From Octopus sinensis (Eukaryota), in NCBI RefSeq assembly GCF_006345805.1, contig NC_043016.1:14756001-14820000 (forward strand): a stretch of 64,000 nt of DNA, in the 5' to 3' direction. Within the stretch, counting starts at the first letter, position 1; each line of letters starts with the position of its first letter. The position numbers and the translations under genes were made by a program. Below, piece by piece: positions 1,994 to 30,500 of this stretch. Under the pieces are notes generated by a model that was given only the letters and a program-made list of their open reading frames with translations, made no database searches and had not been told where the DNA came from.

Positions 1994-2010
1994 TTATGCG
2001 AACACCCAGA
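1994..2010 (-). CDS. Syb: Synaptobrevin terminal coding exon, 17 nt, (V)WVFA*
   Basis: Acceptor tttctttgtcttcctacctatcacAG then TC TGG GTG TTC GCA TAA; phase 1; same 17-nt coding length as the last VAMP2 exon as I recall. Confidence 0.8.
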
Positions 2011-7868: not shown

Positions 7869-10800
7869 TTGCAAAAGATGGAAAAACAGAAATGAAGATA
7901 GTAACATAATATACAGGATTATCATAGAAAGTTGATTAAATTTAACATTACTTCCAATTTAGTGTTTTTGAGAGTTGGGATTGAAAACCTGATCCATCTT
8001 TAATTAAACAATTAGTATATTATATAAAGCATTTAAAAAGTGAGTTAATAGACGCATTACAAATTGAGGTATTTCATACACTGGAATTGAGAGAATATTA
8101 GAGCAGCACAAAAGAACTGACATCTTCTTTGCAATACAGTGTTAGAATAGATGGCAGTTCGTAAGACCAACAATAACTTACCAATGATAATGATAATAAT
8201 CACAAGTACAATGGTAACAAGAATAGCGATCATCTGTAAAAGAGAATTTCAAAAAAGCCAAAAGTGCAAATAAATAAAAAAATTATAAGTAAAAAGAGAT
8301 AACATTGTTTAACCTCTAAAAAGATTGACTTCAACATTATGAAAAAGTTAAAATTAACTGATGCTCAAAAGCAGCTTAAATGCTTTCTGATTTTTTTTTT
8401 TAATTATCTTTTTAAATTTCATCTCAAATTGAGTAGATGAGCCATTCTCATAAAATCTTATGATTAGCAATCTAATATAAGAGGTTAAAATTTCGACATA
8501 AAAAAAAAAAAAAATTTGGCGTGCAAGTGCAAGATAAAAAATAATGACATTCCAGAATATATTTCAAAGAAGAAGGAAAAAGAAAAAAAAAAAAAAAAGA
8601 AAATGAAAGAATGAAAGAAAGATAGCAAATTTGCTTTGCGTGCTATGGGGAAAAAATCCAAATGCAAATTGTCAAAGTATATAAAATTTGAAATAAAATT
8701 TCTAAATTGGCATTCAGTGCTGGAGAAAAGAAAAACACTTTCAAGATGTTGGTTCAGTAACAATCAGCTTTCATCTGGTTGAAAGATTATTTTTTTTTTT
8801 TTATTTCATTTTTTACCACTCAACATATTTTCACACAGTAACCCATACTTTCTGCTCATTTTATAAAAGATAAAATTTAAAACAAGCAGAAAATTACTGC
8901 ATATCATACTGAGTGGGTAAAAAAAAAAAAAAGTGTAATTTCCAGGAAGCTGTTGTAAACAAACTCAACAAGAAAGTGATTGATAATCGATGGCACCAGC
9001 ACTTACCAATGATTACAGTGACAATGGCTGCCACAATCGCACCAAGAATTATCATCATCTGAAATTATCCAGTAATAAGGCTTCATGATTTATCATACCA
9101 TGTTCATAAAATAATTCTACCAGGCTGTATACATTCTAAAATTTAAACTCCTTAATTATTTAATCGAAAGAAAACAAAGAGAAGAAAGGAAATGGTCATC
9201 ACATTTCATTTTTATATAAGATATGTGTTATGGATCAAGTATCCATAATTGAAGATCTTAACTGTTATCCTGCCAAATTACATACAAAGGCAAATTGAAG
9301 ATAAGCTTCTTATGTCACAACTCATGGAGACAAAAAAATGAAGCAGGCACATCTAATTCGAATTTATGTACAATTAAAAACAGAGCTTATTTAAAGCCGC
9401 AATCGTAGCCTAATGTAATCTTATGGAAAGTCATGACTGTGGCTTTTAGCAGGGTAACAGTTAATATTTTAGAATTACAGAGAGTATGAGTCAACATATT
9501 TAATTATCTGAACACTATATTTTTTAAAGCTGTTGAAAGACTATTCTTACATGTATAAAATAGTGCCAAGAACATTCTACAATGTAAATAAATACATTTT
9601 AAAAAAGAAATTTAAATGCTTTAAAAATTTTTTAAATAATGTTTTGTACATATTTTTTAATCCAGAATAAGATTCCAAAATTAATTCACAAATTATGAGG
9701 ATATAAGAAAATTACTTTTACAGCTTTAAAGTCACTTTAACTTAGTAAAATAATATACAGATATAAATTAACTATATATTTCATCGTTTAACTGCCACTC
9801 TCCAAGCAAAGATGCATTGGAAGATTCAATAGGATCCAAAAAATCATAGGACCAAGACATGCTCCAATGTCTTTTATTGTGGTTTCCAAGGCTGGATACC
9901 CTAACAACCACTTGACAGAGCATACTAGTTGCATTTTCATGCTACCAAGAAGACTAAAAAAGAACTTAAAGTGGCCCCTAAAACTGAAGGAGACTTTAAC
10001 AGCATAATAATTTTTAGCAAGGTAATGAAAGACAGTAAAGAATGATAAGAGGAACAGTTTTTTAGCAGTGTGGTGGTAGTGGAGGAGCAGGTAGTGGAGG
10101 GAAGGAAACGGGGGGGGAGGAAGGTCAGGGTCAATGGTTAGCAAGAAAGGAAAGGATAGAACTGTAAAGGTGATGAGACAGGTTGTGTAGAGGGGGTATT
10201 CTGCATTATAAGAGTGAGTATGAATGGTAGGCCTGAGGGGAAGGGAAGATGAAAGAGACGAAATAGATGAGTGGCAAGAATCCAAGAAGAGATAATAAGA
10301 GAGGAGCAAGAGTTGTTGTGGGGGCGGGGGGCTGGTGTAGGAGAGATGATGTAAAAGCTGTGGGGGGGGGGGGGGAGAGAGAGAGTATACAACCACACAT
10401 TTGAAATGGGTTTAAAATATTCAAAGAGATTAACATTTGACCACTTGATAGTATAGAACTTAACAGCAATTAAAAGTTAGACTTTTAAAAACATTTGTTT
10501 CATTATATATGAATTCATTAGAAAAATAAATTCCTCAGATTTAATACAATATAGGTCAAATATTTCCTAGTAATACTTTACTTTTACTTATAAATAAAAA
10601 TTGTTTTAAGAATACGTCTTTTAGATCAATTAATTTCAATAAGTTTAGGTCTTAGAGTATATAATTTTATCAAAATTTAATAAAAACAACTACCAAGAGA
10701 GAGAGTGTGATTTTAACCATAAAACCAAACCTACCTTGCAGTTTTTCCACCAGAATTTACGTTTGAGTTTTCCAGCACTTGCTTCAAACTGTGAGGCACC

Positions 10801-12885
10801 TGCTTGAAGTGCATCTAAAAAGAAATTTTTTTTTTTATGTTAAAAGATAGCCTAAAGTGCTATAAGACAAAATATTACAAACCATTTAAAACAAAATTAG
10901 GAAGTTTACTTCATGTCTAGGGATATTTTACAAGTCAAGAAAAAACTATGCAACAAGATGGTGTAATAGTTTTTAAGAAAAGATGCTTTTACATTCGTCA
11001 GCTGTATTTGTTACAATTTCCAAACAAATGAAATGGAAAAAATGTAATAGCCAAGAGAGAGCCTGTCAAACAACTTCATTAAAAAGAATCATCAACCCAA
11101 GTTTATTCAAGTATTCTTTTCTGTCAGTTTCTGCACAACAACAGTTTACCAGTATGTCACACCCAAAACACAGCTTTTTTAATGACCTATTTAATAACGT
11201 TCTCTCAATTCCTCATTCTATTTGTACTATAGGAAAATGTTGATAGCTTTCACAGATCAACTGAGATTGGCAGGATTGTAATTATATGTTTAGTACAAAC
11301 AATTGCAAAAGAAACAGGAGGAAATTCTTGAGGATTGATATTCAGGAGAGAAATAGGCAAGTTAAAAGTTCAGGTTGGGTGATGAAAAGCAGTATGAGTG
11401 ATAATAAATTGATTCATTGGGTTAAGCAAGATTCAGAAAGGATATAGAACGTGTATCAATCGGAAACATAAATAAGGAAGTTCCACCCACACATAAGAAA
11501 ACTTTTCATATACCCTACACCAACAAACCAAACTACATCTCTTCTCTTCCTTACATTTCCTCCTTCATACACTATGCCTATCTCTCATTCCCCAATCCTG
11601 TCCTCATGGTACTGTTTCTCTGTAGCAAGCCCCCTCCTACTCTATATACCCAGGTTTTCACCTCACACTTCCTCTCCCCCCTCTAATCACACTTCTTTGG
11701 CAATATCCTGCCACTTATATTAAGACCTTCAAACCTCAAAGGTATGCCCTGGCACTTGCCACCATCCATATCTCTCTCTTCCTTTACTTGACCATCCCAT
11801 TTATATTCTGATCCCTGTCCATTGGGAGTATGCCCAGCACTTTCCCCACTCTGTCTCCTTCATTTTCATCAGGTTAGATAACCATGTATCTCCTTTGTGA
11901 CAGCACACCTGTTTCTGTCTTCATTCCTGATCTCTCCCTCTCTCCGGTTGGGCAACCTTGTACCTCCTCTACAGCAAAACACATTTCTGTCTCACTATAA
12001 GCTTTCATCATCACCTCTTTCAATGCCCCCTCCCCTCCTAAAAGATCTTTGTCTTGCAGGTTACATGGTGACCCTATCAGTGCAGGTGCTACTTAAAATG
12101 CATCCAGCTGTAAAACCCTTGTCAAAGCTGACCTGACTTGTGCTTGTGCCATGTAAAAAGCACTAAGTCCACTCTGCTGAGTGGTTGGTGTTAAGAAAGG
12201 CATCCAGCTGTAAAAATCCTGCCAAAACAGTCACAGAAGTCTGGTACAGGATGCTGCTTGGCCGGCTCCTGTCAAACTGTCCTACCCTTGCCAGCATGGA
12301 AGGCAGATGTTAAACGATGATGAAAATATAATTTTGTAGAAAGTTCAGAGCAACAGAGTGAAAAGAAGACAAGAGCTAAGAGATGTGAACACTGAAGTCA
12401 CCAGGACAGAAGTACATTGAACGGAAGTAACTGGAAATTTTTGATGCTGCTATCCAGATGAGAGAGAGTGACTGCGCCATCTTTCAGAGTAAAGTTGAAT
12501 TAGTGACAGTAAAGATCAGCTAGAGACATCAGGTGAGAAATTTGTCTTGAGTGCAAGTTACTTACATGTTAATATCAGATGAACAGGTAGATACACTATT
12601 ACTGACAGAATACATTGATTAAATTACACTATTTTTTAACAATACACCAAACAGAATTCTCAAGCCTGACAAAAACATTTTCAGTTTCATTTTATTAGAT
12701 TCCAAATTAGCCAGTCGTTTAGATGGGGATTTAGATAAATTCAAAATTTATATTTGCATGTCATGTAAGAAATGAAGTTTTAATAAAACTAACCTGCTCT
12801 GTCATCCAGTTCAGAGATTTTAGAATCTCTTTCCAAAACTTTATCAACATTCACGCGCATAATATCTACAACCTGTAGAAAAAGA

Positions 12886-12917
<32 letters not shown>

Positions 12918-14734
12918 TATAAAATGCAACAGCATTAGTAATTTATGCTTCAAATAACCATTTTCATTACTTTATGAAAAATATTTTAAGCTGGTAAAAG
13001 AAATTTTTAAGAAAACTGTATGAAAAAAATGAAAGTAAAGATAGTCTTACACAAAAAATTTGAATGACTCACTTTGCAAAAATTAAGATTGAATAATAAA
13101 GCATGAACAGAATTTTATGAATTACCTCTTCAACTTGAGCCTGTGTTTGTTGCAACCGTTTACTTTGCTGGACAGGCTGAGGAGGGCCTTGTGGTGGGCC
13201 GGGAGGGCCACCAGGCTGTGGTGGGCCTGACCTAAAGAAATATATTAGACAATAAATTAACACTTTGCTTTTGAAATGAATTTAATCCAAATAAGTTTCA
13301 TAATTTAGACATCTTACTTTAAAAGGAATCTAATACAAAAACTAACTGAAAGCAATCTGACAAATTTAGTTGATAACTATATTTTAAAGGAATAAAATAA
13401 TTATCTCCGTAATCAATAATTTATTTTGATTATTCAAAACAAACTTTAATTAGCAAACAAACTTACAAAGCTAAAAAACTTCATGCTTAATACTTAAACA
13501 AGATTGGATTAATCATACTGTACATCCCCACAAAAAATGATAAAACAATTTTTTGGCAAGATATATCAAAAAGACAAGCATGACTTAATTTTTAGCAATG
13601 AAAAAAGAAGTAAATTCAATGTATTTTTTTAAGACAATAAAATTATCTCAAATGAAGATATTACACTAAACTAGAAACATTTCAACAACCTTATGGAAAT
13701 CAAGAAGATTTGCTACCTTATAACTGCTATAGAGAAATTGTTTCTGGAAATCAACTTAAAGAGATTTTCATAAATATAAGATAAAAGAATTACAAAAAAG
13801 AAAAAATTATATAAAATCAAGATAGAAAGAGTACACACACTTGTGTGTGTGTGTGTATATATATATATGTATATATATATATATCCACACACACACACAT
13901 CTTTGGGATGTTGTATAATGTGTCCAACAGAACAGTACATAAAATTTCAAGCATTTATACATGCAGCATCTGTACAATATAAGCACAGAAAACTAAAAAA
14001 ACTGAAAGAGATAGTTCTATAGAGTGCAGTATAAACAAAAAATTAAAATAAATTTACAGAGTCAACAGTGATTACAACAATGAGCAGTAGCTACAGCACA
14101 TTAACTCCGTACTTACGGTGGACCCCCAGGGCCAGCCTGTGGATTTTGTGGTCCAGACCTAAGTAAACATGGAGAAAAATGCATTAGCCACTAAAGAACG
14201 AGGATTTCTTTGAAGTATTTTTTTTATCCGTTATATATTTTTTCACCAACACTTACATGGTAAAAAGCTGTTCCAGGAGCTGTATAAATCAACAACATTA
14301 TATTACAAGCTGTGTATATAATAGAAATTTCCTCCTCTTTGATTCATCTAGAGCAGAAAATCCCATACCCAAAATATGAAGGATTATGAAAATGCTGGAG
14401 TTTTCACTTCAATTATTATTGAGGAACAGAAAAATAGAAATACACTGGTAGAAAGGAAAATTCACGTAAATCAAAATGTGATATGGTTAAAAAGGTTTGG
14501 GTAATAAGTAGTTTTAAAATGAATAGAAATTCACCAAATATGAAAATGAACAGAGTGCTAAAAAAAGTAAAATTATTTTTTTCAGGCACAGGAGTGGGTG
14601 TGTGGTAAGTAGCTAGCTTACCAACCACATAGTTCCGGGTTCAGCCGGCACCTTGGGCAAGTGTCTTCTACAATAACCTCAGGCACTAAAGCCTTGTGAG
14701 TAGATTTGGTAGACGGAAACTGAAAGAAGCCCGT

Positions 14735-17700: not shown

Positions 17701-20700
17701 AAAAAATGGCTTTTAGAAATATAAATAGGATTTCTTTCAAGAAAGCAAATGATCCATCTCGTTTTCCAATCAAGCTTTTTTAAAACCTATTTTAAGATTT
17801 GTATGCATTCTTCATTTCAACCTTTTATAACCCTTATACATGACTTTTTTTTAAAATATGTGAACATTTTTATATCTACATTCAGATATAATAAAACAAA
17901 TATTCTATGCTGATGACCTTGCTCTAATTGCTGAGTCACTATCAGAACTAGAGGAGGTTTCAAGTGTGGAAACAAGAATTAGAATCGAAGGGCCTTAGAG
18001 TCAACCTAGCTAAAACCAAATTCCTAATAAGTAGGAAGGCAGACAAACCACAAATCCCTTCAGGTAGATGGCCCTGCTCGATCTGTAGAAAAGGCATAGG
18101 TAGAAACTCTATAAGATGTACCCAGTGTAAGCTATGGACACATAAAAGGTGCAGCAATGTCAAAGGAAGGCTAACTGGGAAGATAGTTTTTGTATGTGGC
18201 AGATGCTCAGGCGCAATAAACACTGAAAATGCTCAGAGAACAGCTTCCATCACGTTACAGGGAGAAAAACAAGTAGTAGTTGATAGCTTTCGTTACCTAG
18301 GAAGTAGTGGGGGAGGGTGCGCTGAAATTGTAGCTGCTAGAATAAGAATAGCCTGGGCAAAGTTCAGAGAGCTCTTACCTCTGCTGGTGACAAAGGGCCT
18401 CTCGCTCAGAGTAAAATGTAGACTGTATGATGCATGTGTACGAACAGCCATGCTACATGGCAGTGAAACATGGGCCGTGACTGCTGAGGACATGTGTAAA
18501 CTCGCAAGGCATGAAGCCAGTATGTGCCGATGGATGTGTAATATCAGTGTGCATACTTGACAGAGTGTAAGTGCCTTGAGAGAAAAGTTGAACCTAAGAA
18601 GCATCAGATGTGGTGTGCAAGAGAGACGACTGTGCTGGTATGCCATGTGGCAAGAATGGATGTGGATAGCTGTGTGAAAAGGTTCCACACCCTAGCGGTT
18701 GAGGGAACCTGTGGAAGAGGTAGACCCAGGAAGACCTGGGATGAGGTGGTGAAGCATGACCTTTGAACATTGGGCCTCACTGAGGCAATGACTAGTGGCT
18801 GGGACCTTTGGAAATATGCTGTGCTTGAGAAGACTTGGTAAGCTCAAGTGAGACCATAACCATATGACCTATGCCAGGGGTGTAACTATCCCACTTATGC
18901 ATGCCTTTCCTTCATTGGACACTAAACTCTGCTTGTGAAGACCTGTTGAGGCAAGTGAAATCAAAATCGAAATCAAATTCAATGACTGGCATCCGTGCTA
19001 GTGGAGCGCTAAGAGTACCATATGAGCATGATTGTTGCCAGAGCAACAAACTGGCCTCCGTGCTGGTAGCACATAAAAAACGCCATTCGAGCGTGATCGT
19101 TAGCTGTGTCACCTTACTGGCACTTGAAAAACATTCAAGCAAGGTCGTTGCCAGTACCACCTGACTGGCCCTTGTGCCAATGGCATGTAAAAGCACCCAC
19201 TACACCCTTGGAGTGGTTTGCGTTAGGAAGGGCATCCAGCTGTAGAAACTCTGCCAGATCAGATTGGAGCCTGGTGCAGCCATCTGGTTCACCAGACCTC
19301 AGTCAAATTGTCCAACCCATGCTAGCATGGAAAGCAGACGTTAAACGGTAATGATGATTACATGCTATATCCAAACCACAAAACAAGTACAAGTTTGATC
19401 ATATATTTAAGAAGTTTACTCCACAGCTAAGCAGTTCCTAGTTCAGTCCCATTGTGTGGTATCCTGGGGGAAAATATCTTCAACTACAGGTTTGAATCAG
19501 TAAGTGATGAGTGGAATTTGGTAAGCACAAACTGTACAGGAGTCCATCATGTACTTGTGTGACTATTATGATGTGTTCCTTTATGTGCTGTAACTTAGTA
19601 GTCTGACAAATAGATCAATAAAATAAGTATTAGATTCAAATAAGATGTTATGAATTAAATACATAACAGTGGTGTTCCACATGGATGCATAATGAAAAAG
19701 ACAGAAAAAGCTGTATATTTGGTAACTTATTCTACTTCAAAGAAGCCTATAAACAAAGGCTTGATTCCAACTGTGACCATTTCTTTTGAGGAGCAAAGAA
19801 GGAATATATCATCAGATTTTTCTTTCATTTATCTAAGATGGTAGCAATGTAAAGTGAAAATCTCTTGGCTTTCTGTAGCAAGTTGGTCTCCTTGCTAGTA
19901 AGTGCATTAATTCTATAATTCAATGACCATATTGTAAAAATTATTAGTTGTTTTTAAACATGGCTTCCAAATTGGGACATATGTGCCTCCAGGAGTATAC
20001 TTGGTCTTCTCAAGGGTATGTAAAGGCCTGGAAGTTTAACCAAGCTGAACAATGTAGCAACAAATTTTTTACAAAACTAATTTACAGAAACCATTTCAAA
20101 ATATAGTCATTGCATGCAGCATCAGTGACCAGATGCAATCTCTCTGGCCATATCATATAGGCTGGGCAAGAATGGGAATAAATTTCAATTCAAGTATAGC
20201 CATTCCAAATTATGAAAGCTGGAATTTTCCCGTAAGTACAAAATACTCTGACTTCATTTCTCCATTTAAAAATAAAACAAAATTTCATCTTTTCCGTTTA
20301 TATAGTCTTTGACCAAGAGAACTGCATTTTTCTCAGCTCTTCAAACAAAGACCTGCTTACAATAATTCTCTCCCCAGAATCTAAGATTTGGAAATGAGTA
20401 TTGTGAAATTCCATGTGGATCATTACTTAACTGAATTACATTACATACCATAACACTATATCACCAAGACATAAATGTTAAATTATTTTCCCTGAGCTGG
20501 TACAATAAAAATATGGAAAATTATAACAGAAGATAGGAAAAACAATCTCTTGGGTTTTCTAAAAAGTAAAATCAATTGATATCAATGATCTTTAAAAAAA
20601 CAAAAAAACCCCGAATTCCTGATTTATGCTTAATGAACTTTCCCATTATTAATTGCAACTATCTCTGCTCCATCTCACTTCCAAACTTCCACGAATCTCA

Positions 20701-24536: not shown

Positions 24537-27500
24537 ATTGCTCAGTATTAGATGTATTTAATTCATTGGCAACTATTGTTATATGTGCATGCAACAAAAT
24601 TCTTAGTGTGAAAAAGTATATATGTAAGCTAGACACAGTGTGTGAAAAAGGAAGATAGTCCATCTTTGCACTCTTGATACAATCATTGTTACAAGGTAGC
24701 TTTAGGAGAAATGCAAAGAGCAACATTAGGATCTGTTCAGTGCATTTGTGGATCTGCCAAATGTTTGACACAGCAAACAGGAAAACTTATGAGGGTGTTC
24801 TCAGAAACTGGCTGCCTACCCAAAACTGTGTAAACTCATCTACTAGTTCTGCATAAGGATGATAGTATGAGTATTTGGAGGACAGATGTGTCTGTGCATC
24901 AACTGTAAAAACGGGTTATGTATGACTGTACACCAGTTCCTGAAATGCTTAAGATTTTCTTTACCTATACTACACAGAAGGATAAAACAGGATAATCTAT
25001 TAACTTTTTAGTTGATAAAAGTTTTCCCAACATAAAGCAGTAGATCACCACAAAGTTCAAATCTGAGCTTATAGCATGCTGAAGACTGAATAGTAATGAA
25101 AGAATGCAATTGGCAAATCATTTATCAATAGCACATGGTACCACCCTTCCAATTACTTTCTCAGCACAACAACAATAACTACCTTGCATCATTTCCAATG
25201 ACTCTGCACAAGATGAAAAAAATTCTAAATTACAGGTTTCTTACCAAGATCTTTGTCAACTGGAAAGAGTTTCCTGTAAAGTGTAAATTAAGGACTATCC
25301 GAAATGCTTCTGGAGTCCTTTAGCATCCAGTGTCTCAAGAAGATTCTTTCATTTACATGGTAAGATAGGTCTGTGCATACAAATATCTCCATTGAACGAA
25401 AACCAACAGCACTGATCAACCTAGACAAACATCAACTTGTATAGAGTGATCTGTGACACTACATGGACATATAGTTCACACACTTGACTCACATCTCCAT
25501 AGAATCCTCTACAACCAGTTACAGTATGAGCAATGCCTGGTTGGAAAGTAAAATAACTGGTTTAAAGACCATTTGACAATTCATTCAAGGATCAACAACA
25601 ACCTTCCAAAAGTCATTGCCAGCTGTCAGAGAGGAATCGAAGAGGAATATAGGGGCAAAACAAAGAATTTTGTCTGCAACCTAAATAGTACTTGAAGGTT
25701 TAGGATCATCATCCTAATCTTTGATGTGCAGCTTCAGTTGCAAATAGGACATTGGTTTAATATGTACTTTCTGTGCTTGCATGGCTCAAACAGAAATTGA
25801 GACAGATTTTCTACAGCTGAATGGCCTTTTTGTTGCCAACCCTCATACTCCCAAGCAAGATACGAGGAGGTACCCAAAAGAAACTGGAATTTTGCAATAT
25901 AATTTTATTCATTTAGTTTTACACGTTTACACTTTTATCGCCTTCAAAGTATTCTCCATTTGAAGCAATGCATCAGTTCAGGCATGTTTTACCGTGTCTG
26001 AAGCAGTGCTGGAACTCTTGCAGAGTGATGCCTTTAAACACCTCCATCATTTCTTTCTTCAACTCTTCCACATCTGCAAATTCCACAGCACCAGCTTTCA
26101 TCATCAAAAAAAGGTCCAGATCAACTTCCAACTGTTCATTCAGTTCATAACACACTCATGACAACTTTTGATCTTCCATGAGCAAGCGAGGCACAAGTTT
26201 ATTGCAACTCTTTTCATTTGCAATTCCTCACTCAAAATTCGTTGGTAGGAGCTCCAGGATACACCAGTCATATCAACTGTTGTTCAGTGATGGTCCTTCA
26301 AGATCAGTTCATGAACTCTTTATTCCTTCAGAAGGTCAATGGCCATCCTGAATGAGGTTGGCCTTCAAGCAGCAAATGACCATTCCTAGAGTGTGGAAAC
26401 CACACATAAATTTGTGTTTTGCTCACAATAGCGTCCTTGTAAGCTGTTTCAGCAGAAAACAATTTCATGGAAGTACGCTGTTCCTTCATTTCAGCCACCA
26501 CAAAAGCTGATGAACAGGGGCGATGCACTGCAAAACAAAGAGGTATCACATAGCAGTTCAACTGCACTCAATGCTGCTTATTGGCGAACTGATGCCTGAG
26601 GGTGGCATCAAGTGACTTCTAGTGATAGAAGCCTGAATTATTGGGTTGTCTGGAAAGTTCGTACGGATTTATAGTAGCTTACCTTTCAACTTATTTTAGA
26701 ACATGGTTGAGTCCATAAAATAGGATTTGACTACACCCCCATTTAGAGCACAGTTTAAGCTATCTTTTCGTGGAAGAAGATTTATGTTCCTATAATCTGT
26801 CTTAATTCTGTAACCCTTTAAAATAGAAGATAAGTTCATTTTCGGCACTTTATGCTTTTCGTTTTCCGTAAAGGGAAAAATGCCTCACAAGCAACCAAAG
26901 AAATATGCACAGCTCACGGTGGTGTTTTTTTTATCCAAACGAACTGTACGGAAGTGGTTCGCAAGGTTCCAAGCTGGAGATTGTAGCCTTATTGATAAAG
27001 AGTGCTCAGGCAGACCATCCACCACAGATGATGACCAAATCAAGTCATTATTTGAGAATAACCCACATTGCACAACCCAAGAATTGGCAGAAAGCCTCAC
27101 CCTATCAAAATCCATCATTCATGAGCACCTGGTAAAGTTTGGGTATACAAATTGCTACGATGTTTGGGTACCACATGAGTTGAGTGAGAAGAACCTTTTG
27201 GATCGCATGATAAAGCAAATTGTGACAGGTGATGAGAAATGGATTATCTACCGAAATGTTCAGAGTAAGCGACATGAGCCACCCCAAAAGCGGGTCTTCA
27301 CCCTAAAAAAGTCTTGCTTTGTGTCTGGTGGGATTGGAAAGGAATTCTGTACTATGAGCTTCTCCCAAGTAGCCAGACAATTCTGAGAAATACTGCATAC
27401 AACTGGGTGAGTTAAAAGCAGCAATTCAAGAGAAACGTCCAGAATTGGCCAACAGGAAGGGTGTTGTTTTCCAACATGATAATGCAAGACCACACATTTC

Positions 27501-30500
27501 TTTGGGAACCAGACAAAAATTGCTGCAGCTTGGCTGGGATGTGTTACTCCACCCTCCATATTCACCAGATATTGCTCCTTCGGATTCTCCCTTATTCAGG
27601 TCTCCGCAGAATAGTCTTAATGGTAAAAATTTCAATTCCTTGGACGACGTAAAAAGATACCTTGATGAATTCTTTGCCATGAAACCACCTCAATTCTGGG
27701 AAGAGGGTATTTTCAAGTTAAAGGAAAGATGGAGACACATTGTGCAACAAAATGGTTCACATTTGGTTGATTAAAAATGTAATGGCAAGTATTTATTGAC
27801 CTTTTTCTTTCCTTTAAAACTTAGCACAAACTTTCTGAACAACCCAATACAATGGGTTTATCCCATAGAGAATGTCTCCAGTTACTTTTGGGTACCTCCC
27901 CCCTTGTATTTTCCCCATGACCAGACCTGATTCTCAGAGAAGAGTGGAAGCAAATGATGCTCATTTGAAATCATCACATGATGCCAAGACAAACACACAC
28001 ACACACACACAACAGGATTCTTTCAGTTTCTGACTATCAAATCCACTCAAAACTTTGGTCACCCTAGGACTATGTGGAAGATCCTTATCCATGTGGGATT
28101 GAACCCTAAAAAACATGACTGGGAAGGCTGTAGTAATCAAAAGAACTGCCAAGATTCAATGGACAACCATAAGCCAGCACGTTTGTATGTCAGAGAGAGA
28201 GAGAGAGAGAGAGAGAGCAGAAAGAGAGATTGTTTAGCCTCAAATTAATCTTGACAAAGCAGATATGCAATCAAAAGTATTAAAGCTATGCTCATCATTG
28301 CCAGTTTGGAGTATGCACAACTGCATTATTCAGTAGATATTTTTTTCATCAGTACAATATGCTAGGATGGAGAGATTTGGATGTGATGTCTAGTAGGACA
28401 AGCAGACATGAGGATCCCTTGTAGGCTTTTCACTATGTAGGGGGACACACTGAACTATGTATGTGAAAGGAAAGACATTAAAGCATGTGTGAAACAAAGA
28501 GATGTTCCAGTATATGTGGGACAGAGAAACAGAGTGAGGGAGAGAGAGGAAAAAACAGTGAGAGAGGGAGAGGAGAGAAGGTGAGGAGAGAGGGTGAGGA
28601 GAGGGGGGTGAAGAGAGGGGGGTGAAGAGAGAGGGGTGAGGAGAGGGGGGTGAAGAGAGGGGGTGAGGAGAGAGGGTGAGGAGAGAGGGTGAGGAGAGTG
28701 AGAAGAGAGTGAGTGGAGGGAGGGTGAGGAGAGTGAGATCAGTGAGAGGGGAGGGAGGGTGAGGAGAGTGAGATCAGTGAGAGGGGAGGGAGAGAGATAA
28801 GGGGAGAGAGATAAGGAGAGAGAGATGAGGGGAGAGAGATAAGGGGAGAGAGATAAGGGGAGAGAGATAAGGGGAGAGAGATAAGGGAAGAGAGATAAGG
28901 GGAGAGAGATAAGGGGAGAGAGACGGGGGTAGAAGGGGAGGGATGGAGAGAGGAGGATGGAGAGAGACGGAGAGGGAGATAGGGAGAGGGAAACAGACAG
29001 AGCGAAAAAGATGTTCTTGTGTATTTGAGGGAGTGAGAGAGATATCTCAATGTATGTTGGAGAAAGAGTGAGAAAGGGATGTTCTGGTGTGTGTAAGAGA
29101 GCAAGAGAGAGACCCTGGTGTATGTGGGAGAGAGAGATGTGTCCTAGCCTACATGGAGAGGGGAGAGAAGTGATCCAACCTATGTGAGGAAGGGAGTGTA
29201 TGTGGGGGAGAGCAAGGGAGAAAGATGTCCTGGTGTATGCAGGAGAGGAGAGATGCTTGGGCGTATGTGGGAGGGAGATATGCTCAGCTGAGTGAGGGAG
29301 ATATGCCCAGCTGAGTGAGGGAGATATGCCCAGCTGAGTGAGGGAGATATGCCCAGCTGAGTGAGGGAGATATGCCCAGCTGAGTGAGGGAGGGAGATAT
29401 GCCTGGCTGAGTGAGGGAGGGAGATATGCCTGGCTGAGTGAGGGAGGGAGATATGCCTGGCTGGGTGAGCAAGGGAGATATGCTTGGCTGAGTGAGAGAG
29501 AGAGATGCTCGATTTGAGTGCAAGATACAGAGAGAGAGATACTCGGTTTGGGAGCAAGATACAAAGAGAGATGCTTGGTTTGGGTGCAAGGGACAGAGAG
29601 AGAGAGACACTCGGTTTGCGTACAACAGCCGAGTGCAAGAGGCAGGTGCTCAGCCGAATGAGAGAGATATGCTTAGTTAAGACAGAAAGAGATATGCTTG
29701 GCTGAGTGCAAGAGAAAGAGAAGGAAAGAGATGCTCAGTTGAGTGTGTGTGTCAGAGAGAAAGAGATGCTTGGCTAAGTGTGTGAGAGGTGCTCATCTGT
29801 ATATGAGAGAGAGAAAAGTGTCCAATTGTCAGTTGTACTGAGAGATGGATAAATGTGCATTTGTAAATGAGAAAGATGTTCAGCTGTGATATATATGCAC
29901 TTATGCATATACAATTGTGTTAATTTTAGTCAACAAAAATAGGCATGTTTTCATTAGTTATTTTTGAGCCCATCACTGAAAAACAAATGATAAATATCAA
30001 CGACAAACATATGTGGTGATGATTTCCTCAAATTAAAATTCTCCAGAATATATATGAATAAACATGAAATATTGAATCAAATTTCAAATAAAATTGATTT
30101 TTATCAGTTGAAATTTAAAAGAAAAAAAATAACACTAGCAAAATGAATTCCCTGTTCATATGTAACTTAGTTCTGCCCATATGATAGGCTCAAAATAATA
30201 CTAGTTACAATTCTAATTCACTGTTGACTGGTTAAAGGTTGAAATAGATTCAATTTCAAAAGCACTTGATCCAATATCTGTATATAATAAAAACTTTCAG
30301 AAACTACTACATGCAAGATAGCTGATAAAAACGAGAATAATACCAAAATATTGTAAGTTTTGGGAATAGCATCAAAATGTATGTAGACTGTATTTAAGCA
30401 TATGTCACCAGAAAGAAAAAGCAAACTCAGCATAGCTGCAGTTCATGTAAGTGTAAATAAGCAAAGACAGTTCAATGGATTTCATGACATTGTATTTTTT

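What the first reader, a model, noticed from the sequence alone, without database searches (positions are those of the whole stretch)
8182..9058. Two alternative transmembrane exons in synaptobrevin: a VAMP2-like and a VAMP3-like anchor in one gene
Seen: two intact 52-nt phase 0-1 exons, each AG/ATG...G/GTAAGT, 773 nt apart. 6a = [17 protein letters not shown]; 6b = [17 protein letters not shown]. Either completes the frame after KNCK; both together shift it. 6b has the stronger pyrimidine tract, so it may be the default. Recalled knowledge: VAMP2 reads MMIILGVICAIILIIIIVY and VAMP3/cellubrevin MWAIGITVLVIFIIIIIVW. The VAMP2 G100 hinge and the beta-branched content of the TMD affect fusion-pore behaviour. 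6a keeps that glycine (10/17 beta-branched); 6b replaces it with Val (13/17). Inference: the gene switches membrane anchor by mutually exclusive splicing, doing what vertebrates (VAMP2/VAMP3) and flies (nSyb/Syb) do by gene duplication. I do not know of this being described in cephalopods, but cannot exclude existing database isoform annotations.
Basis: partly seen in the sequence, partly recalled or inferred. Interest (0 to 1): 0.88.

Follow-up and report, generated by a model that had tools for sequence, protein, structure and literature searches.

The report
Octopus synaptobrevin alternative membrane-anchor exons
The octopus synaptobrevin (VAMP) gene has two interchangeable 52-base exons, each encoding a different membrane anchor; the pair is real and the second exon is spliced into mRNA in a related species, but it is an old feature shared with chitons, snails and annelids, not an octopus invention.

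Summary
On the minus strand, 9058..9007 encodes [17 protein letters not shown] and 8233..8182 encodes [17 protein letters not shown]. Both exons are 52 nt, ag|ATG…G|gtaagt, phase 0→1 and 773 nt apart. They are the only such matches in the window (chance expectation 0.025).

Mutually exclusive use is well supported:
- **Transcript evidence.** Two assembled mRNA contigs from independent public runs of a diverged relative join exon 5 directly to exon 6b and skip 6a. Against the window they show 33 synonymous and 0 non-synonymous codon changes (dS about 0.7; 3 and 0 within 6b).
- **Conserved gene structure.** The same tandem pair, a glycine-containing "MM" exon followed by a "MW" exon, lies in the orthologous gene of a chiton, a snail and an annelid. 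RefSeq isoforms there differ only in this exon.
- **Similarity to vertebrate anchors.** 6a resembles VAMP1/2-type anchors and 6b resembles VAMP3-type anchors (13/17 identical to marsupial VAMP3), although 6b has lost the signature Trp.

The feature is therefore ancestral to molluscs plus annelids and already implicit in database annotations. I found no paper describing it. Not tested: both junctions in this species, tissue specificity and functional consequence. The genome also holds two further VAMP-like paralogues.

The parts
14257..14279 (-). Candidate 3' end of the first exon, carrying the first two bases of the start codon (…ACCAT|gtaagt)
   Evidence: Inferred. It is one of only three purine-NN-ATGT(A/G)AG sites upstream of exon 2 on this strand. 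It gives a weak local alignment (score 24) to the end of the 5'UTR of the relative's mRNA. The exon probably extends further 5'.
14117..14158 (-). Exon 2, 42 nt, encoding (M)[13 protein letters not shown](P); a probable cassette exon
   Evidence: ag|GTCTGG…CCACC|gtaagt. Its length is a multiple of 3 and it has the same entry phase as exon 3. It is absent from the relative's mRNA contigs, which go from ATG straight to exon 3.
13126..13231 (-). Exon 3, Pro-rich N-terminus to QTQAQVEE
   Evidence: 87.7% identical to the relative's mRNA.
12794..12872 (-). Exon 4, [26 protein letters not shown] (first half of the SNARE motif, with the 0-layer Arg)
   Evidence: 89.9% identical to the relative's mRNA.
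10735..10814 (-). Exon 5, [27 protein letters not shown], ending in phase 0
   Evidence: 88.8% identical to the relative's mRNA.
9007..9058 (-). Exon 6a, transmembrane anchor [17 protein letters not shown] (MM / VAMP1-2 type, with Gly at position 6)
   Evidence: It is 9-12/17 identical to the MM exons of chiton, snail, annelid and brittle star, against 6/17 to MW exons. It is the first of the tandem pair, as in the other species.
8234..9006 (-). 773-nt intron between the two alternative exons; AT-rich with long U and A runs
   Evidence: No convincing selector/docking hairpin, no Rfam match and no consistent Rbfox, CELF or PTB motif pattern.
8182..8233 (-). Exon 6b, transmembrane anchor [17 protein letters not shown] (derived MW / VAMP3 type, no Gly, Trp lost)
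   Evidence: Single-copy in the genome. Found spliced after KNCK in the Logan contigs L014 and L015, with 49/52 nt identical and all 3 changes synonymous. It is the second of the pair, like the MW exons elsewhere.
1994..2010 (-). Putative terminal exon 7a, coding part (G)TC TGG GTG TTC GCA TAA = VWVFA*
   Evidence: It is the only AG-preceded, phase-1 'VW' continuation downstream of 6b in the window. The conserved VW and the short-tail exon preceding the long-tail exon match Biomphalaria. There is no transcript evidence. A second terminal exon, 7b (VWQVNENK*), lies outside the window at G000:C20:14748022..14747997, minus strand.

Best explanation
This is the canonical synaptobrevin/VAMP (brevin R-SNARE) gene of an octopus. 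After exon 5 (…WWKNCK) the spliceosome uses one of two tandem 52-nt exons. The protein therefore receives one of two tail anchors: a glycine-containing 'MM' anchor (6a, VAMP1/2-like) or a glycine-free, more beta-branched anchor (6b, the local version of the 'MW'/VAMP3-like exon). Because 52 is not a multiple of 3, only single inclusion gives a membrane-anchored protein. The 773-nt spacing rules out steric exclusion, so the choice must be set by trans-acting splicing regulators.

Shown:
- The exon pair exists and is orthologous to a pair present since at least the mollusc-annelid ancestor.
- 6b is spliced into mRNA without 6a in a relative.
- 6b is under strong purifying selection.

Inferred:
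- 6a is the neuronal/synaptic-vesicle form. It has a weak 3' splice site, and the molluscan MM isoforms are the ones named synaptobrevin; Lymnaea 'synaptobrevin isoform A' (P0054) carries the MM anchor, and as far as I recall the molluscan CNS cDNAs do too.
- 6b is the more general form, used on non-synaptic or larger carriers.
- The swap tunes anchor flexibility, and hence fusion-pore behaviour, and possibly sorting.

The choice combines with an optional 42-nt N-terminal exon and two alternative terminal exons.
For: - **Sequence and frame:**
- **Not chance, not a repeat:**
- **Family membership:** both isoforms hit Pfam PF00957 at about 111 bits.
- **Transcript with KNCK|[17 protein letters not shown]|VW…:** protein P0121 on two contigs from SRR27666087 and SRR24189492. 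These align exon by exon to the window and omit 6a.
- **Selection:** 33 synonymous and 0 non-synonymous codon differences; dS 0.70 overall and 0.28 in 6b. The 3'UTR is only 70% identical.
- **Same two 52-nt exons in the same order:** Liolophura, Biomphalaria, Owenia.
- **Annotated isoform pairs with identical flanks:** Liolophura P0014/P0002, Biomphalaria P0046/P0034, Physella P0048/P0037.
- **Class assignment:** 6a averages 9.9/17 identity to MM anchors and 6.7 to MW. 6b averages 10.3 to MW and 6.4 to MM. The best non-cephalopod matches of 6b are VAMP3 at 13/17. Region searches return synaptobrevin/VAMP1/VAMP2 for 6a and VAMP3(-like) for 6b.
- **Splice-site pattern:** the MM exon has the weaker pyrimidine tract in 3 of 4 species.
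- **Functional background:** G100 and beta-branched content of the VAMP2 anchor affect fusion-pore kinetics (PMC5460238, PMC4972536, PMC7239655).
Against: - No RNA data for this species could be reached. Exact look-ups of my isoform models found nothing, and records of the window's own genome appear to be withheld.
- No 6a-containing cephalopod transcript was recovered, so use of 6a rests on orthology and intactness.
- The two Logan runs could not be assigned to a species or tissue. If they were DNA libraries, the intronless contig would be a retrocopy, which would still prove the splice once occurred.
- 6b lacks the Trp that defines MW/VAMP3 anchors, and it discriminates MW from MM only modestly (10-11 versus 8-10 of 17).
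- No regulatory motif or RNA structure explaining the exclusivity was found.
- With both exons included, or neither, the new stop lies in the last exon. Classical NMD would therefore not clear such transcripts.
Confidence: 0.85

Rival explanations
1. Exon 6b is a relic in this species. It would be a conserved-looking duplicate that is no longer spliced here, so the gene makes only the 6a (classical synaptobrevin) anchor.
For: No transcript from this species was available. 6b has lost the Trp found in MW exons of other phyla.
Against: The frame is intact, the donor is a perfect gtaagt, and its pyrimidine tract is the stronger of the two. There are only 3 synonymous and 0 non-synonymous changes against a relative at dS of about 0.7, where the neighbouring 3'UTR has dropped to 70% identity. 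The relative splices it. A neutral 52-mer would not survive since the mollusc-annelid ancestor.
Confidence: 0.04
2. The exons are not strictly mutually exclusive. Transcripts containing both, or neither, would be a regulated product that yields an anchorless, soluble synaptobrevin acting as a modulator.
For: Database predictions that read through both exons and frameshift exist in oyster (P0038) and Physella (P0101). In octopus the frameshifted stop lies in the last exon, so such mRNAs would escape classical NMD.
Against: The frameshifted tails are unconserved nonsense. The conserved feature across phyla is the 52-nt length and frame of each exon separately. The only recovered transcripts carry exactly one exon. 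The read-through models may be gene-prediction artefacts.
Confidence: 0.05
3. Same splicing, different purpose. The anchor swap would mainly determine sorting and partners (which vesicle or membrane domain the SNARE enters, synaptophysin-type interactions, membrane-thickness matching) rather than fusion-pore kinetics.
For: - For C. elegans syntaxin, the two alternatively spliced anchors are expressed in neuronal versus non-neuronal cells and are not interchangeable. Small hydrophobicity differences are thought to sort syntaxins into distinct membrane domains (PMC4946901).
- In Dhara et al. 2020, natural anchor swaps left total secretion unchanged.
- The near-identity of the MW anchor from annelid and chiton to shark VAMP3 suggests specific contacts rather than bulk flexibility.
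Against: [quoted passage not shown] The two purposes are not mutually exclusive.
Confidence: 0.4

Closest known systems
The MM/MW transmembrane exon pair of other lophotrochozoan synaptobrevin genes (RefSeq isoforms such as Liolophura sinensis synaptobrevin-like X2 vs VAMP3-like X5/X6, and Biomphalaria glabrata synaptobrevin X2 vs VAMP3 X1; also the Owenia fusiformis locus)
   Same: Two tandem 52-nt exons, AG|ATG…|GT, phase 0→1, directly after …WWKNCK. The Gly-containing MM exon comes first and the MW-type second, 0.4-2 kb apart, followed by alternative VW… terminal exons. The octopus pair is the orthologue.
   Different: Octopus 6b has diverged: MIAILVT… instead of MWAILIA…, with Trp2 lost through a codon that differs at all three bases. 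It is 10-11/17 identical to the others, whereas the chiton and annelid MW exons are 17/17 identical to each other.
Vertebrate VAMP1/VAMP2 versus VAMP3 (cellubrevin) paralogues
   Same: The same two anchor classes. 6a is 12/17 identical to lamprey VAMP2-like and 6b is 13/17 identical to marsupial/monotreme VAMP3. The lophotrochozoan MW exon is nearly identical to shark VAMP3 (MWAILIAVILVIIIIIV vs MWAILIAVILIIIIIIV).
   Different: In vertebrates the two anchors sit in separate genes. In the two deuterostome invertebrate genes I read (brittle star, acorn worm) the anchor is fused to the KNCK exon, with no intron and no second copy.
C. elegans unc-64/syntaxin exons 8a/8b, and mammalian syntaxin 2 isoforms
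   Same: Alternative splicing replaces the C-terminal membrane anchor of a SNARE. In the worm this gives neuronal versus non-neuronal isoforms that are not functionally equivalent, under CELF/UNC-75 control (PMC4946901).
   Different: That is a Q-SNARE, and the alternative exons are terminal exons, not an internal frame-locked pair. No CELF-type UGUG clusters were seen here.
Other SNARE isoform switches: SNAP-25 exon 5a/5b, VAMP1A/1B C-terminal variants, Drosophila n-Syb C-terminal variants
   Same: These are alternative splicing within the core exocytotic SNAREs. n-Syb variants with an alternative C-terminus are cell-type biased (PMC6025963). SNAP-25 5a/5b and VAMP1A/B are cited from general knowledge.
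   Different: None of these exchanges the whole transmembrane helix of the v-SNARE through an internal mutually exclusive pair.

Membership tests
Synaptobrevin/VAMP 'brevin' R-SNARE (Pfam PF00957) | Pfam Synaptobrevin domain above the gathering score | tested here: met
   Both isoforms score 110.5-111.8 bits against a cut-off of 26.4, covering residues 38-123.
Synaptobrevin/VAMP 'brevin' R-SNARE (Pfam PF00957) | 0-layer arginine in …SELDDRADAL…, a juxtamembrane WWKN motif, a single C-terminal tail anchor, and no longin domain | tested here: met
   Read directly from the spliced model. The cytoplasmic part is identical to the squid synaptobrevin chain P0033.
Mutually exclusive exon pair | Neighbouring exons of equal length and equal phase, with intact splice sites and recognisable sequence similarity | tested here: met
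   52 nt each, phase 0→1, ag…gtaagt on both, 33/52 nt and 8/17 aa identical, 773 nt apart.
Mutually exclusive exon pair | Joint inclusion or joint skipping destroys the reading frame | tested here: met
   Including both gives …[14 protein letters not shown]…; including neither gives …KNCKSGCSHKILCDV*.
Mutually exclusive exon pair | Transcripts that contain one exon without the other, shown for each exon | tested here: inconclusive
   A 6b-only mRNA was found in a related species, in two runs. A 6a-only mRNA was not retrievable for any cephalopod. Either/or isoforms are annotated in other molluscs. Nothing was available for this species itself.
VAMP1/2-type transmembrane anchor (for 6a) | MMIILG start with Gly at the G100-equivalent position | tested here: met
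   MMIILGA…; 53 of 58 MM-class anchors have Gly at position 6.
VAMP1/2-type transmembrane anchor (for 6a) | Central Cys (C103 of VAMP2) | tested here: not met
   Position 9 is Val in 6a. Molluscan MM exons also lack it, so this is a vertebrate trait.
VAMP3/cellubrevin-type ('MW') transmembrane anchor (for 6b) | Met-Trp start | tested here: not met
   6b starts Met-Ile (ATG ATC). All 96 MW-class anchors have Trp by definition.
VAMP3/cellubrevin-type ('MW') transmembrane anchor (for 6b) | No Gly at position 6, an Ile-rich C-terminal half, and best overall similarity to VAMP3 anchors | tested here: met
   0 of 96 MW anchors have Gly at position 6, and 6b has Val there. 6b is 13/17 identical to marsupial and monotreme VAMP3. 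Mean identity is 10.3 to MW against 6.4 to MM. It occupies the second position in the tandem pair, as MW exons do.

The most novel reading that the evidence does not exclude
The two anchor classes may be older than the gene duplications. In this reading, an ancestral bilaterian (or at least protostome) brevin gene already carried a VAMP2-like and a VAMP3-like transmembrane exon as a mutually exclusive pair. The vertebrate VAMP1/2 versus VAMP3 anchors would then descend from these two exons, so a splice choice was converted into paralogues, with loss of the K|M intron in deuterostomes.

Observations that fit:
- The annelid/chiton MW exon is nearly identical to shark VAMP3.
- Chelicerate and priapulid isoforms carry two anchor types (MIAIMVG… and MWAILI…) on otherwise matching sequences.
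Probability: 0.25. Interest if true: 0.8.

Novelty: new member of a known kind. Interest (0 to 1): 0.55.

Why it matters
Whether the transmembrane helix of a v-SNARE is a passive anchor or an active, tuned part of the fusion machine is still debated. Most evidence comes from artificial mutants or from swaps between distant paralogues.

Here one gene keeps two complete alternative anchors, and each has been held under purifying selection since before molluscs and annelids split. One resembles VAMP1/2 and the other VAMP3. That is strong evolutionary evidence that the anchor sequence itself is functional.

It also offers a natural, minimal pair for experiment: identical cytoplasmic SNARE, 17 residues exchanged. 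Cephalopods add large accessible synapses in which isoform choice could be mapped to vesicle type.

For annotation, gene models that include both exons, or that name the isoforms of one gene 'synaptobrevin' and 'VAMP3-like', should be read as one locus with a mutually exclusive pair.

Tried and rejected
- **Chance ORF or repeat-derived pseudo-exon.** Rejected: the pattern is unique in the window, null expectation is 0.025, and 6b is single-copy in the genome.
- **Cephalopod innovation.** Rejected: the same pair occurs in chiton, snail and annelid.
- **Looking up this species' annotated isoforms.** This led nowhere. 14 exact-sequence models were absent from the collection, a spliced model is not accepted by the look-up of encoding contigs, and cephalopod full-length proteins never appear in the searches. 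They are probably withheld together with the window's own genome.
- **Locus look-ups for other phyla.** Oyster, nemertean, priapulid, two spiders and a nematomorph all failed, because only the longest product per gene is indexed. Whether ecdysozoans have the pair in one gene stays open.
- **Mechanism of exclusivity.**
  - Inverted repeats in 8100-10800 are only A/T homopolymer pairings.
  - There are no Rfam hits in the window.
  - No Rbfox GCAUG, CELF UGUGU or PTB CUCU pattern is shared by the four species.
  - Steric hindrance is excluded by the 773-nt spacing.
  - NMD is unlikely because the frameshifted stops fall in the last exon.
- **Terminal exon.** A 'VY…' candidate at 8080 was rejected because its tail is unconserved and looks random. 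VWVFA* at 2010 is kept as putative. The transcript-supported terminal exon lies outside the window.
- **Literature.** Five full-text searches found no description of alternative transmembrane exons in synaptobrevin (papers read). The library lacks most subscription journals, so this is not proof of absence.
Full report
**1. The observation**

On the minus strand, the window holds two 52-nt open exons. The first, 9058..9007, encodes [17 protein letters not shown] plus a split G. The second, 8233..8182, encodes [17 protein letters not shown] plus a split G. Each is preceded by ag and followed by gtaagt, and a 773-nt intron separates them.

- The upstream exon ends in phase 0 after …FWWKNCK at 10735.
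- Either exon keeps the frame. Including both, or neither, shifts it.
- Beta-branched counts of 10/17 and 13/17 are correct.
- A scan of both strands of the whole window for this exon shape finds only these two sites. Shuffled sequence gives 0.025 per 64 kb.
- Exon 6b with its flanks is single-copy in the 2.72-Gb genome.

**2. The gene**

The exons belong to a synaptobrevin/VAMP gene on the minus strand:

| Exon | Window coordinates | Encodes |
|---|---|---|
| 2 (optional, 42 nt) | 14158..14117 | [13 protein letters not shown] |
| 3 | 13231..13126 | Pro-rich N-terminus to QAQVEE |
| 4 | 12872..12794 | [12 protein letters not shown]…DDRA |
| 5 | 10814..10735 | DALQAGAS…WWKNCK |
| 6a / 6b | 9058..9007 / 8233..8182 | the two anchors |
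| 7a (putative) | 2010..1994 | VWVFA* |

- Exon 7a is the only 'VW' continuation in the window.
- A second terminal exon, VWQVNENK*, lies about 8 kb beyond the left edge of the window, at G000:C20:14748022..14747997.
- Both isoforms match Pfam Synaptobrevin at about 111 bits.
- The cytoplasmic part is identical to the squid synaptobrevin chain in the PDB-derived entry P0033.

**3. Is 6b used?**

A region-restricted protein search returned P0121, with the sequence …FWWKNCK|[17 protein letters not shown]|VWTVNDNKKGGN. It sits on two roughly 1.09-kb contigs assembled from two independent public runs, SRR27666087 and SRR24189492.

These contigs align to the window exon by exon: exon 3 at 88%, exon 4 at 90%, exon 5 at 89% and exon 6b at 94%. 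They omit exon 2 and exon 6a. They therefore come from a different, fairly diverged species, probably another octopod, though I could not resolve the accessions. They show an exon 5→6b→terminal-exon mRNA.

Over 106 codons there are 33 synonymous and 0 non-synonymous differences:

| Region | dS | Changes |
|---|---|---|
| All compared codons | 0.70 | 33 synonymous, 0 non-synonymous |
| Constitutive exons | 0.84 | 30 synonymous, 0 non-synonymous |
| Exon 6b | 0.28 | 3 synonymous, 0 non-synonymous |

The adjoining 3'UTR is only 70% identical. Exon 6b is thus under strong protein-level constraint. It also shows reduced synonymous change, which is common in regulated alternative exons.

Caveat: if those runs were DNA libraries, the contig would be a retrocopy. 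That would still document the splice.

**4. Comparative anatomy**

The first protein search showed many molluscs with isoforms from one contig that share N- and C-termini but carry either an MMIILG-type or an MW(A/L)ILI-type anchor. Examples are Liolophura P0014 vs P0002/P0021, Biomphalaria P0046 vs P0034, and Physella P0048 vs P0037. NCBI names these 'synaptobrevin' and 'VAMP3-like' respectively.

Reading the loci confirms the same architecture. There are two 52-nt exons, AG|ATG…|GT, with MM first and MW second:

| Species | Group | Spacing |
|---|---|---|
| Liolophura | chiton | 926 nt |
| Biomphalaria | snail | 1997 nt |
| Owenia | annelid | 422 nt |

- Biomphalaria also has a short and then a long alternative terminal exon, like the octopus.
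- An oyster model and a Physella model that include both exons show exactly the expected frameshifted read-through.
- 6a is 9-12/17 identical to MM exons and 6/17 to MW exons. 6b is 10-11/17 identical to MW exons and 8-10/17 to MM exons. Together with exon position, this makes 6a the MM orthologue and 6b a derived MW orthologue that has lost Trp2.
- In a brittle star and an acorn worm the anchor is fused to the KNCK exon and there is only one.

The pair is therefore at least as old as the mollusc-annelid ancestor and is not shown for deuterostomes. Chelicerate and priapulid proteins show two anchor types (MIAIMVG… and MWAILI…) on otherwise matching sequences. Their loci could not be fetched.

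**5. VAMP2-like versus VAMP3-like**

Across 177 fetched brevins, 6a averages 9.9/17 identity to MM anchors and 6.7 to MW anchors. 6b averages 10.3 to MW and 6.4 to MM.

- The best non-cephalopod matches of 6b are marsupial and monotreme VAMP3, at 13/17.
- 6a reaches 12/17 to lamprey VAMP2-like.
- Region searches return synaptobrevin/VAMP1/VAMP2 for 6a and VAMP3(-like) for 6b.

One qualification applies to each: 6b lacks the Met-Trp signature, and 6a lacks the vertebrate C103.

**6. Mechanism**

Shown:
- There are two frame-locked alternative exons.
- Single inclusion of 6b occurs in a relative.
- The pair is deeply conserved.

Inferred: the choice is made by trans-acting regulators.
- The 773-nt spacing excludes steric exclusion.
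- Both introns are GT-AG.
- Frameshifted stops fall in the last exon, so NMD is not the filter.
- I found no selector/docking hairpin, no Rfam element and no shared Rbfox, CELF or PTB motif pattern.
- The MM exon has the weaker pyrimidine tract in three of four species. This fits an activator-dependent, probably neuronal, exon and a default MW/6b exon. The evidence is weak.

Functional inference: the anchors differ at the G100-equivalent Gly and in beta-branched content. Counting by hand from the two peptides, the N-terminal half has 4/9 beta-branched residues in 6a and 6/9 in 6b. In VAMP2 these features change anchor flexibility and fusion-pore kinetics, and they correlate with vesicle size among natural VAMPs (PMC5460238, PMC4972536, PMC7239655). 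A sorting or partner-binding role is an equally live alternative, as argued for the alternatively spliced syntaxin anchors of C. elegans (PMC4946901).

**7. Comparison and novelty**

The closest known thing is the orthologous exon pair already implicit in RefSeq isoform sets of other molluscs. The closest described analogue is the unc-64/syntaxin 8a/8b anchor switch.

Five full-text searches found no paper describing alternative transmembrane exons in synaptobrevin. The library is incomplete.

I rate this a new member of a known kind. It is real, well supported and useful, but not specific to cephalopods. It also does not replace gene duplication, since the genome holds two further VAMP-like paralogues.

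The most novel reading not excluded is that the VAMP2-type and VAMP3-type anchors began as this exon pair and became separate genes in vertebrates.

**8. Limits**

- No RNA data for this species were reachable.
- No cephalopod 6a transcript was recovered.
- The species and tissue of the two runs are unknown.
- Exon 7a and the first exon are inferred.
- Tissue specificity and function are untested.

Noticed in passing
window 14117-14158 (-): A 42-nt exon ([13 protein letters not shown]) opens with nearly the same bases as exon 3 (GTCTGGACCAC… vs GTCAGGCCCAC…), has the same phase and is a multiple of 3. The relative's mRNA goes from ATG straight to exon 3. This is a likely cassette exon that lengthens the Pro-rich N-terminus, apparently born by internal duplication.
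   Followed up: partly
window 1994-2010 (-) and G000:C20:14747997-14748022 (-), locus L016: There are two alternative terminal exons: a short tail VWVFA* inside the window (no transcript evidence) and VWQVNENK* about 8 kb beyond the left edge. The latter is orthologous to the VWTVNDNKKGGN* exon used in the relative's mRNA. The same short-then-long layout occurs in Biomphalaria (VWVTQG* then VWVVTSTGG…).
   Followed up: partly
L001 (G000:C7512:85537-85707) and L002 (G000:C8999:40054-40218): Two further VAMP-like genes lie on small unplaced scaffolds (67-68% identical over the SNARE motif). The DDRA|DALQ intron is lost, but a short intron is kept exactly at the K|M boundary before a single MM-like anchor (MKLIIGGVVLTVLVVIIVWVVLKHKKNN; MMICLGVVLAILITV…). 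These are apparently octopus-lineage paralogues.
   Followed up: partly
exon 6b versus exons 3-5 (window 8182-8233 vs 10735-13231), compared with L014/L015: Synonymous divergence is three times lower in the alternative exon 6b (dS 0.28) than in the constitutive exons (0.84). This suggests overlapping splicing signals inside the exon. The sample is small, at 13 synonymous sites.
   Followed up: no
proteins P0009, P0013, P0017, P0024 (spider VAMP models): Predicted spider proteins contain the first half of the SNARE motif twice in a row (VVGIMRVNVEKV…DDRAG and VVDIMRTNVEKV…DDRA), while P0155 has it once. This looks like a second mutually exclusive exon pair in chelicerate synaptobrevin that gene models have concatenated.
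   Followed up: no
proteins P0038 (Magallana gigas) and P0101 (Physella acuta): These database models include both transmembrane exons and read the second one out of frame (…IIIIDVVNSYCNHSYYNHNNC…). They are either annotation artefacts or low-level double-inclusion transcripts.
   Followed up: no
window 26814-27774 (+) and 17952-18560 (+): Both are transposon remnants upstream of the gene. One is a broken mariner/Tc1-like transposase (weak HTH_32, HTH_48 and Tc3 hits, below the Pfam cut-offs). The other is an ORF with a PHD-finger match of 24.6 bits, just above the 24-bit cut-off, that looks like the tail of a retroelement.
   Followed up: partly
window about 28400-29700: A roughly 1.3-kb stretch is strongly strand-asymmetric and C/T-rich on the minus strand (GC skew +0.55 on the plus strand). 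It gives long SLSLS/PLSS-type pseudo-ORFs. The 5'UTR of the relative's mRNA is also CT-rich, but no real alignment was found.
   Followed up: no
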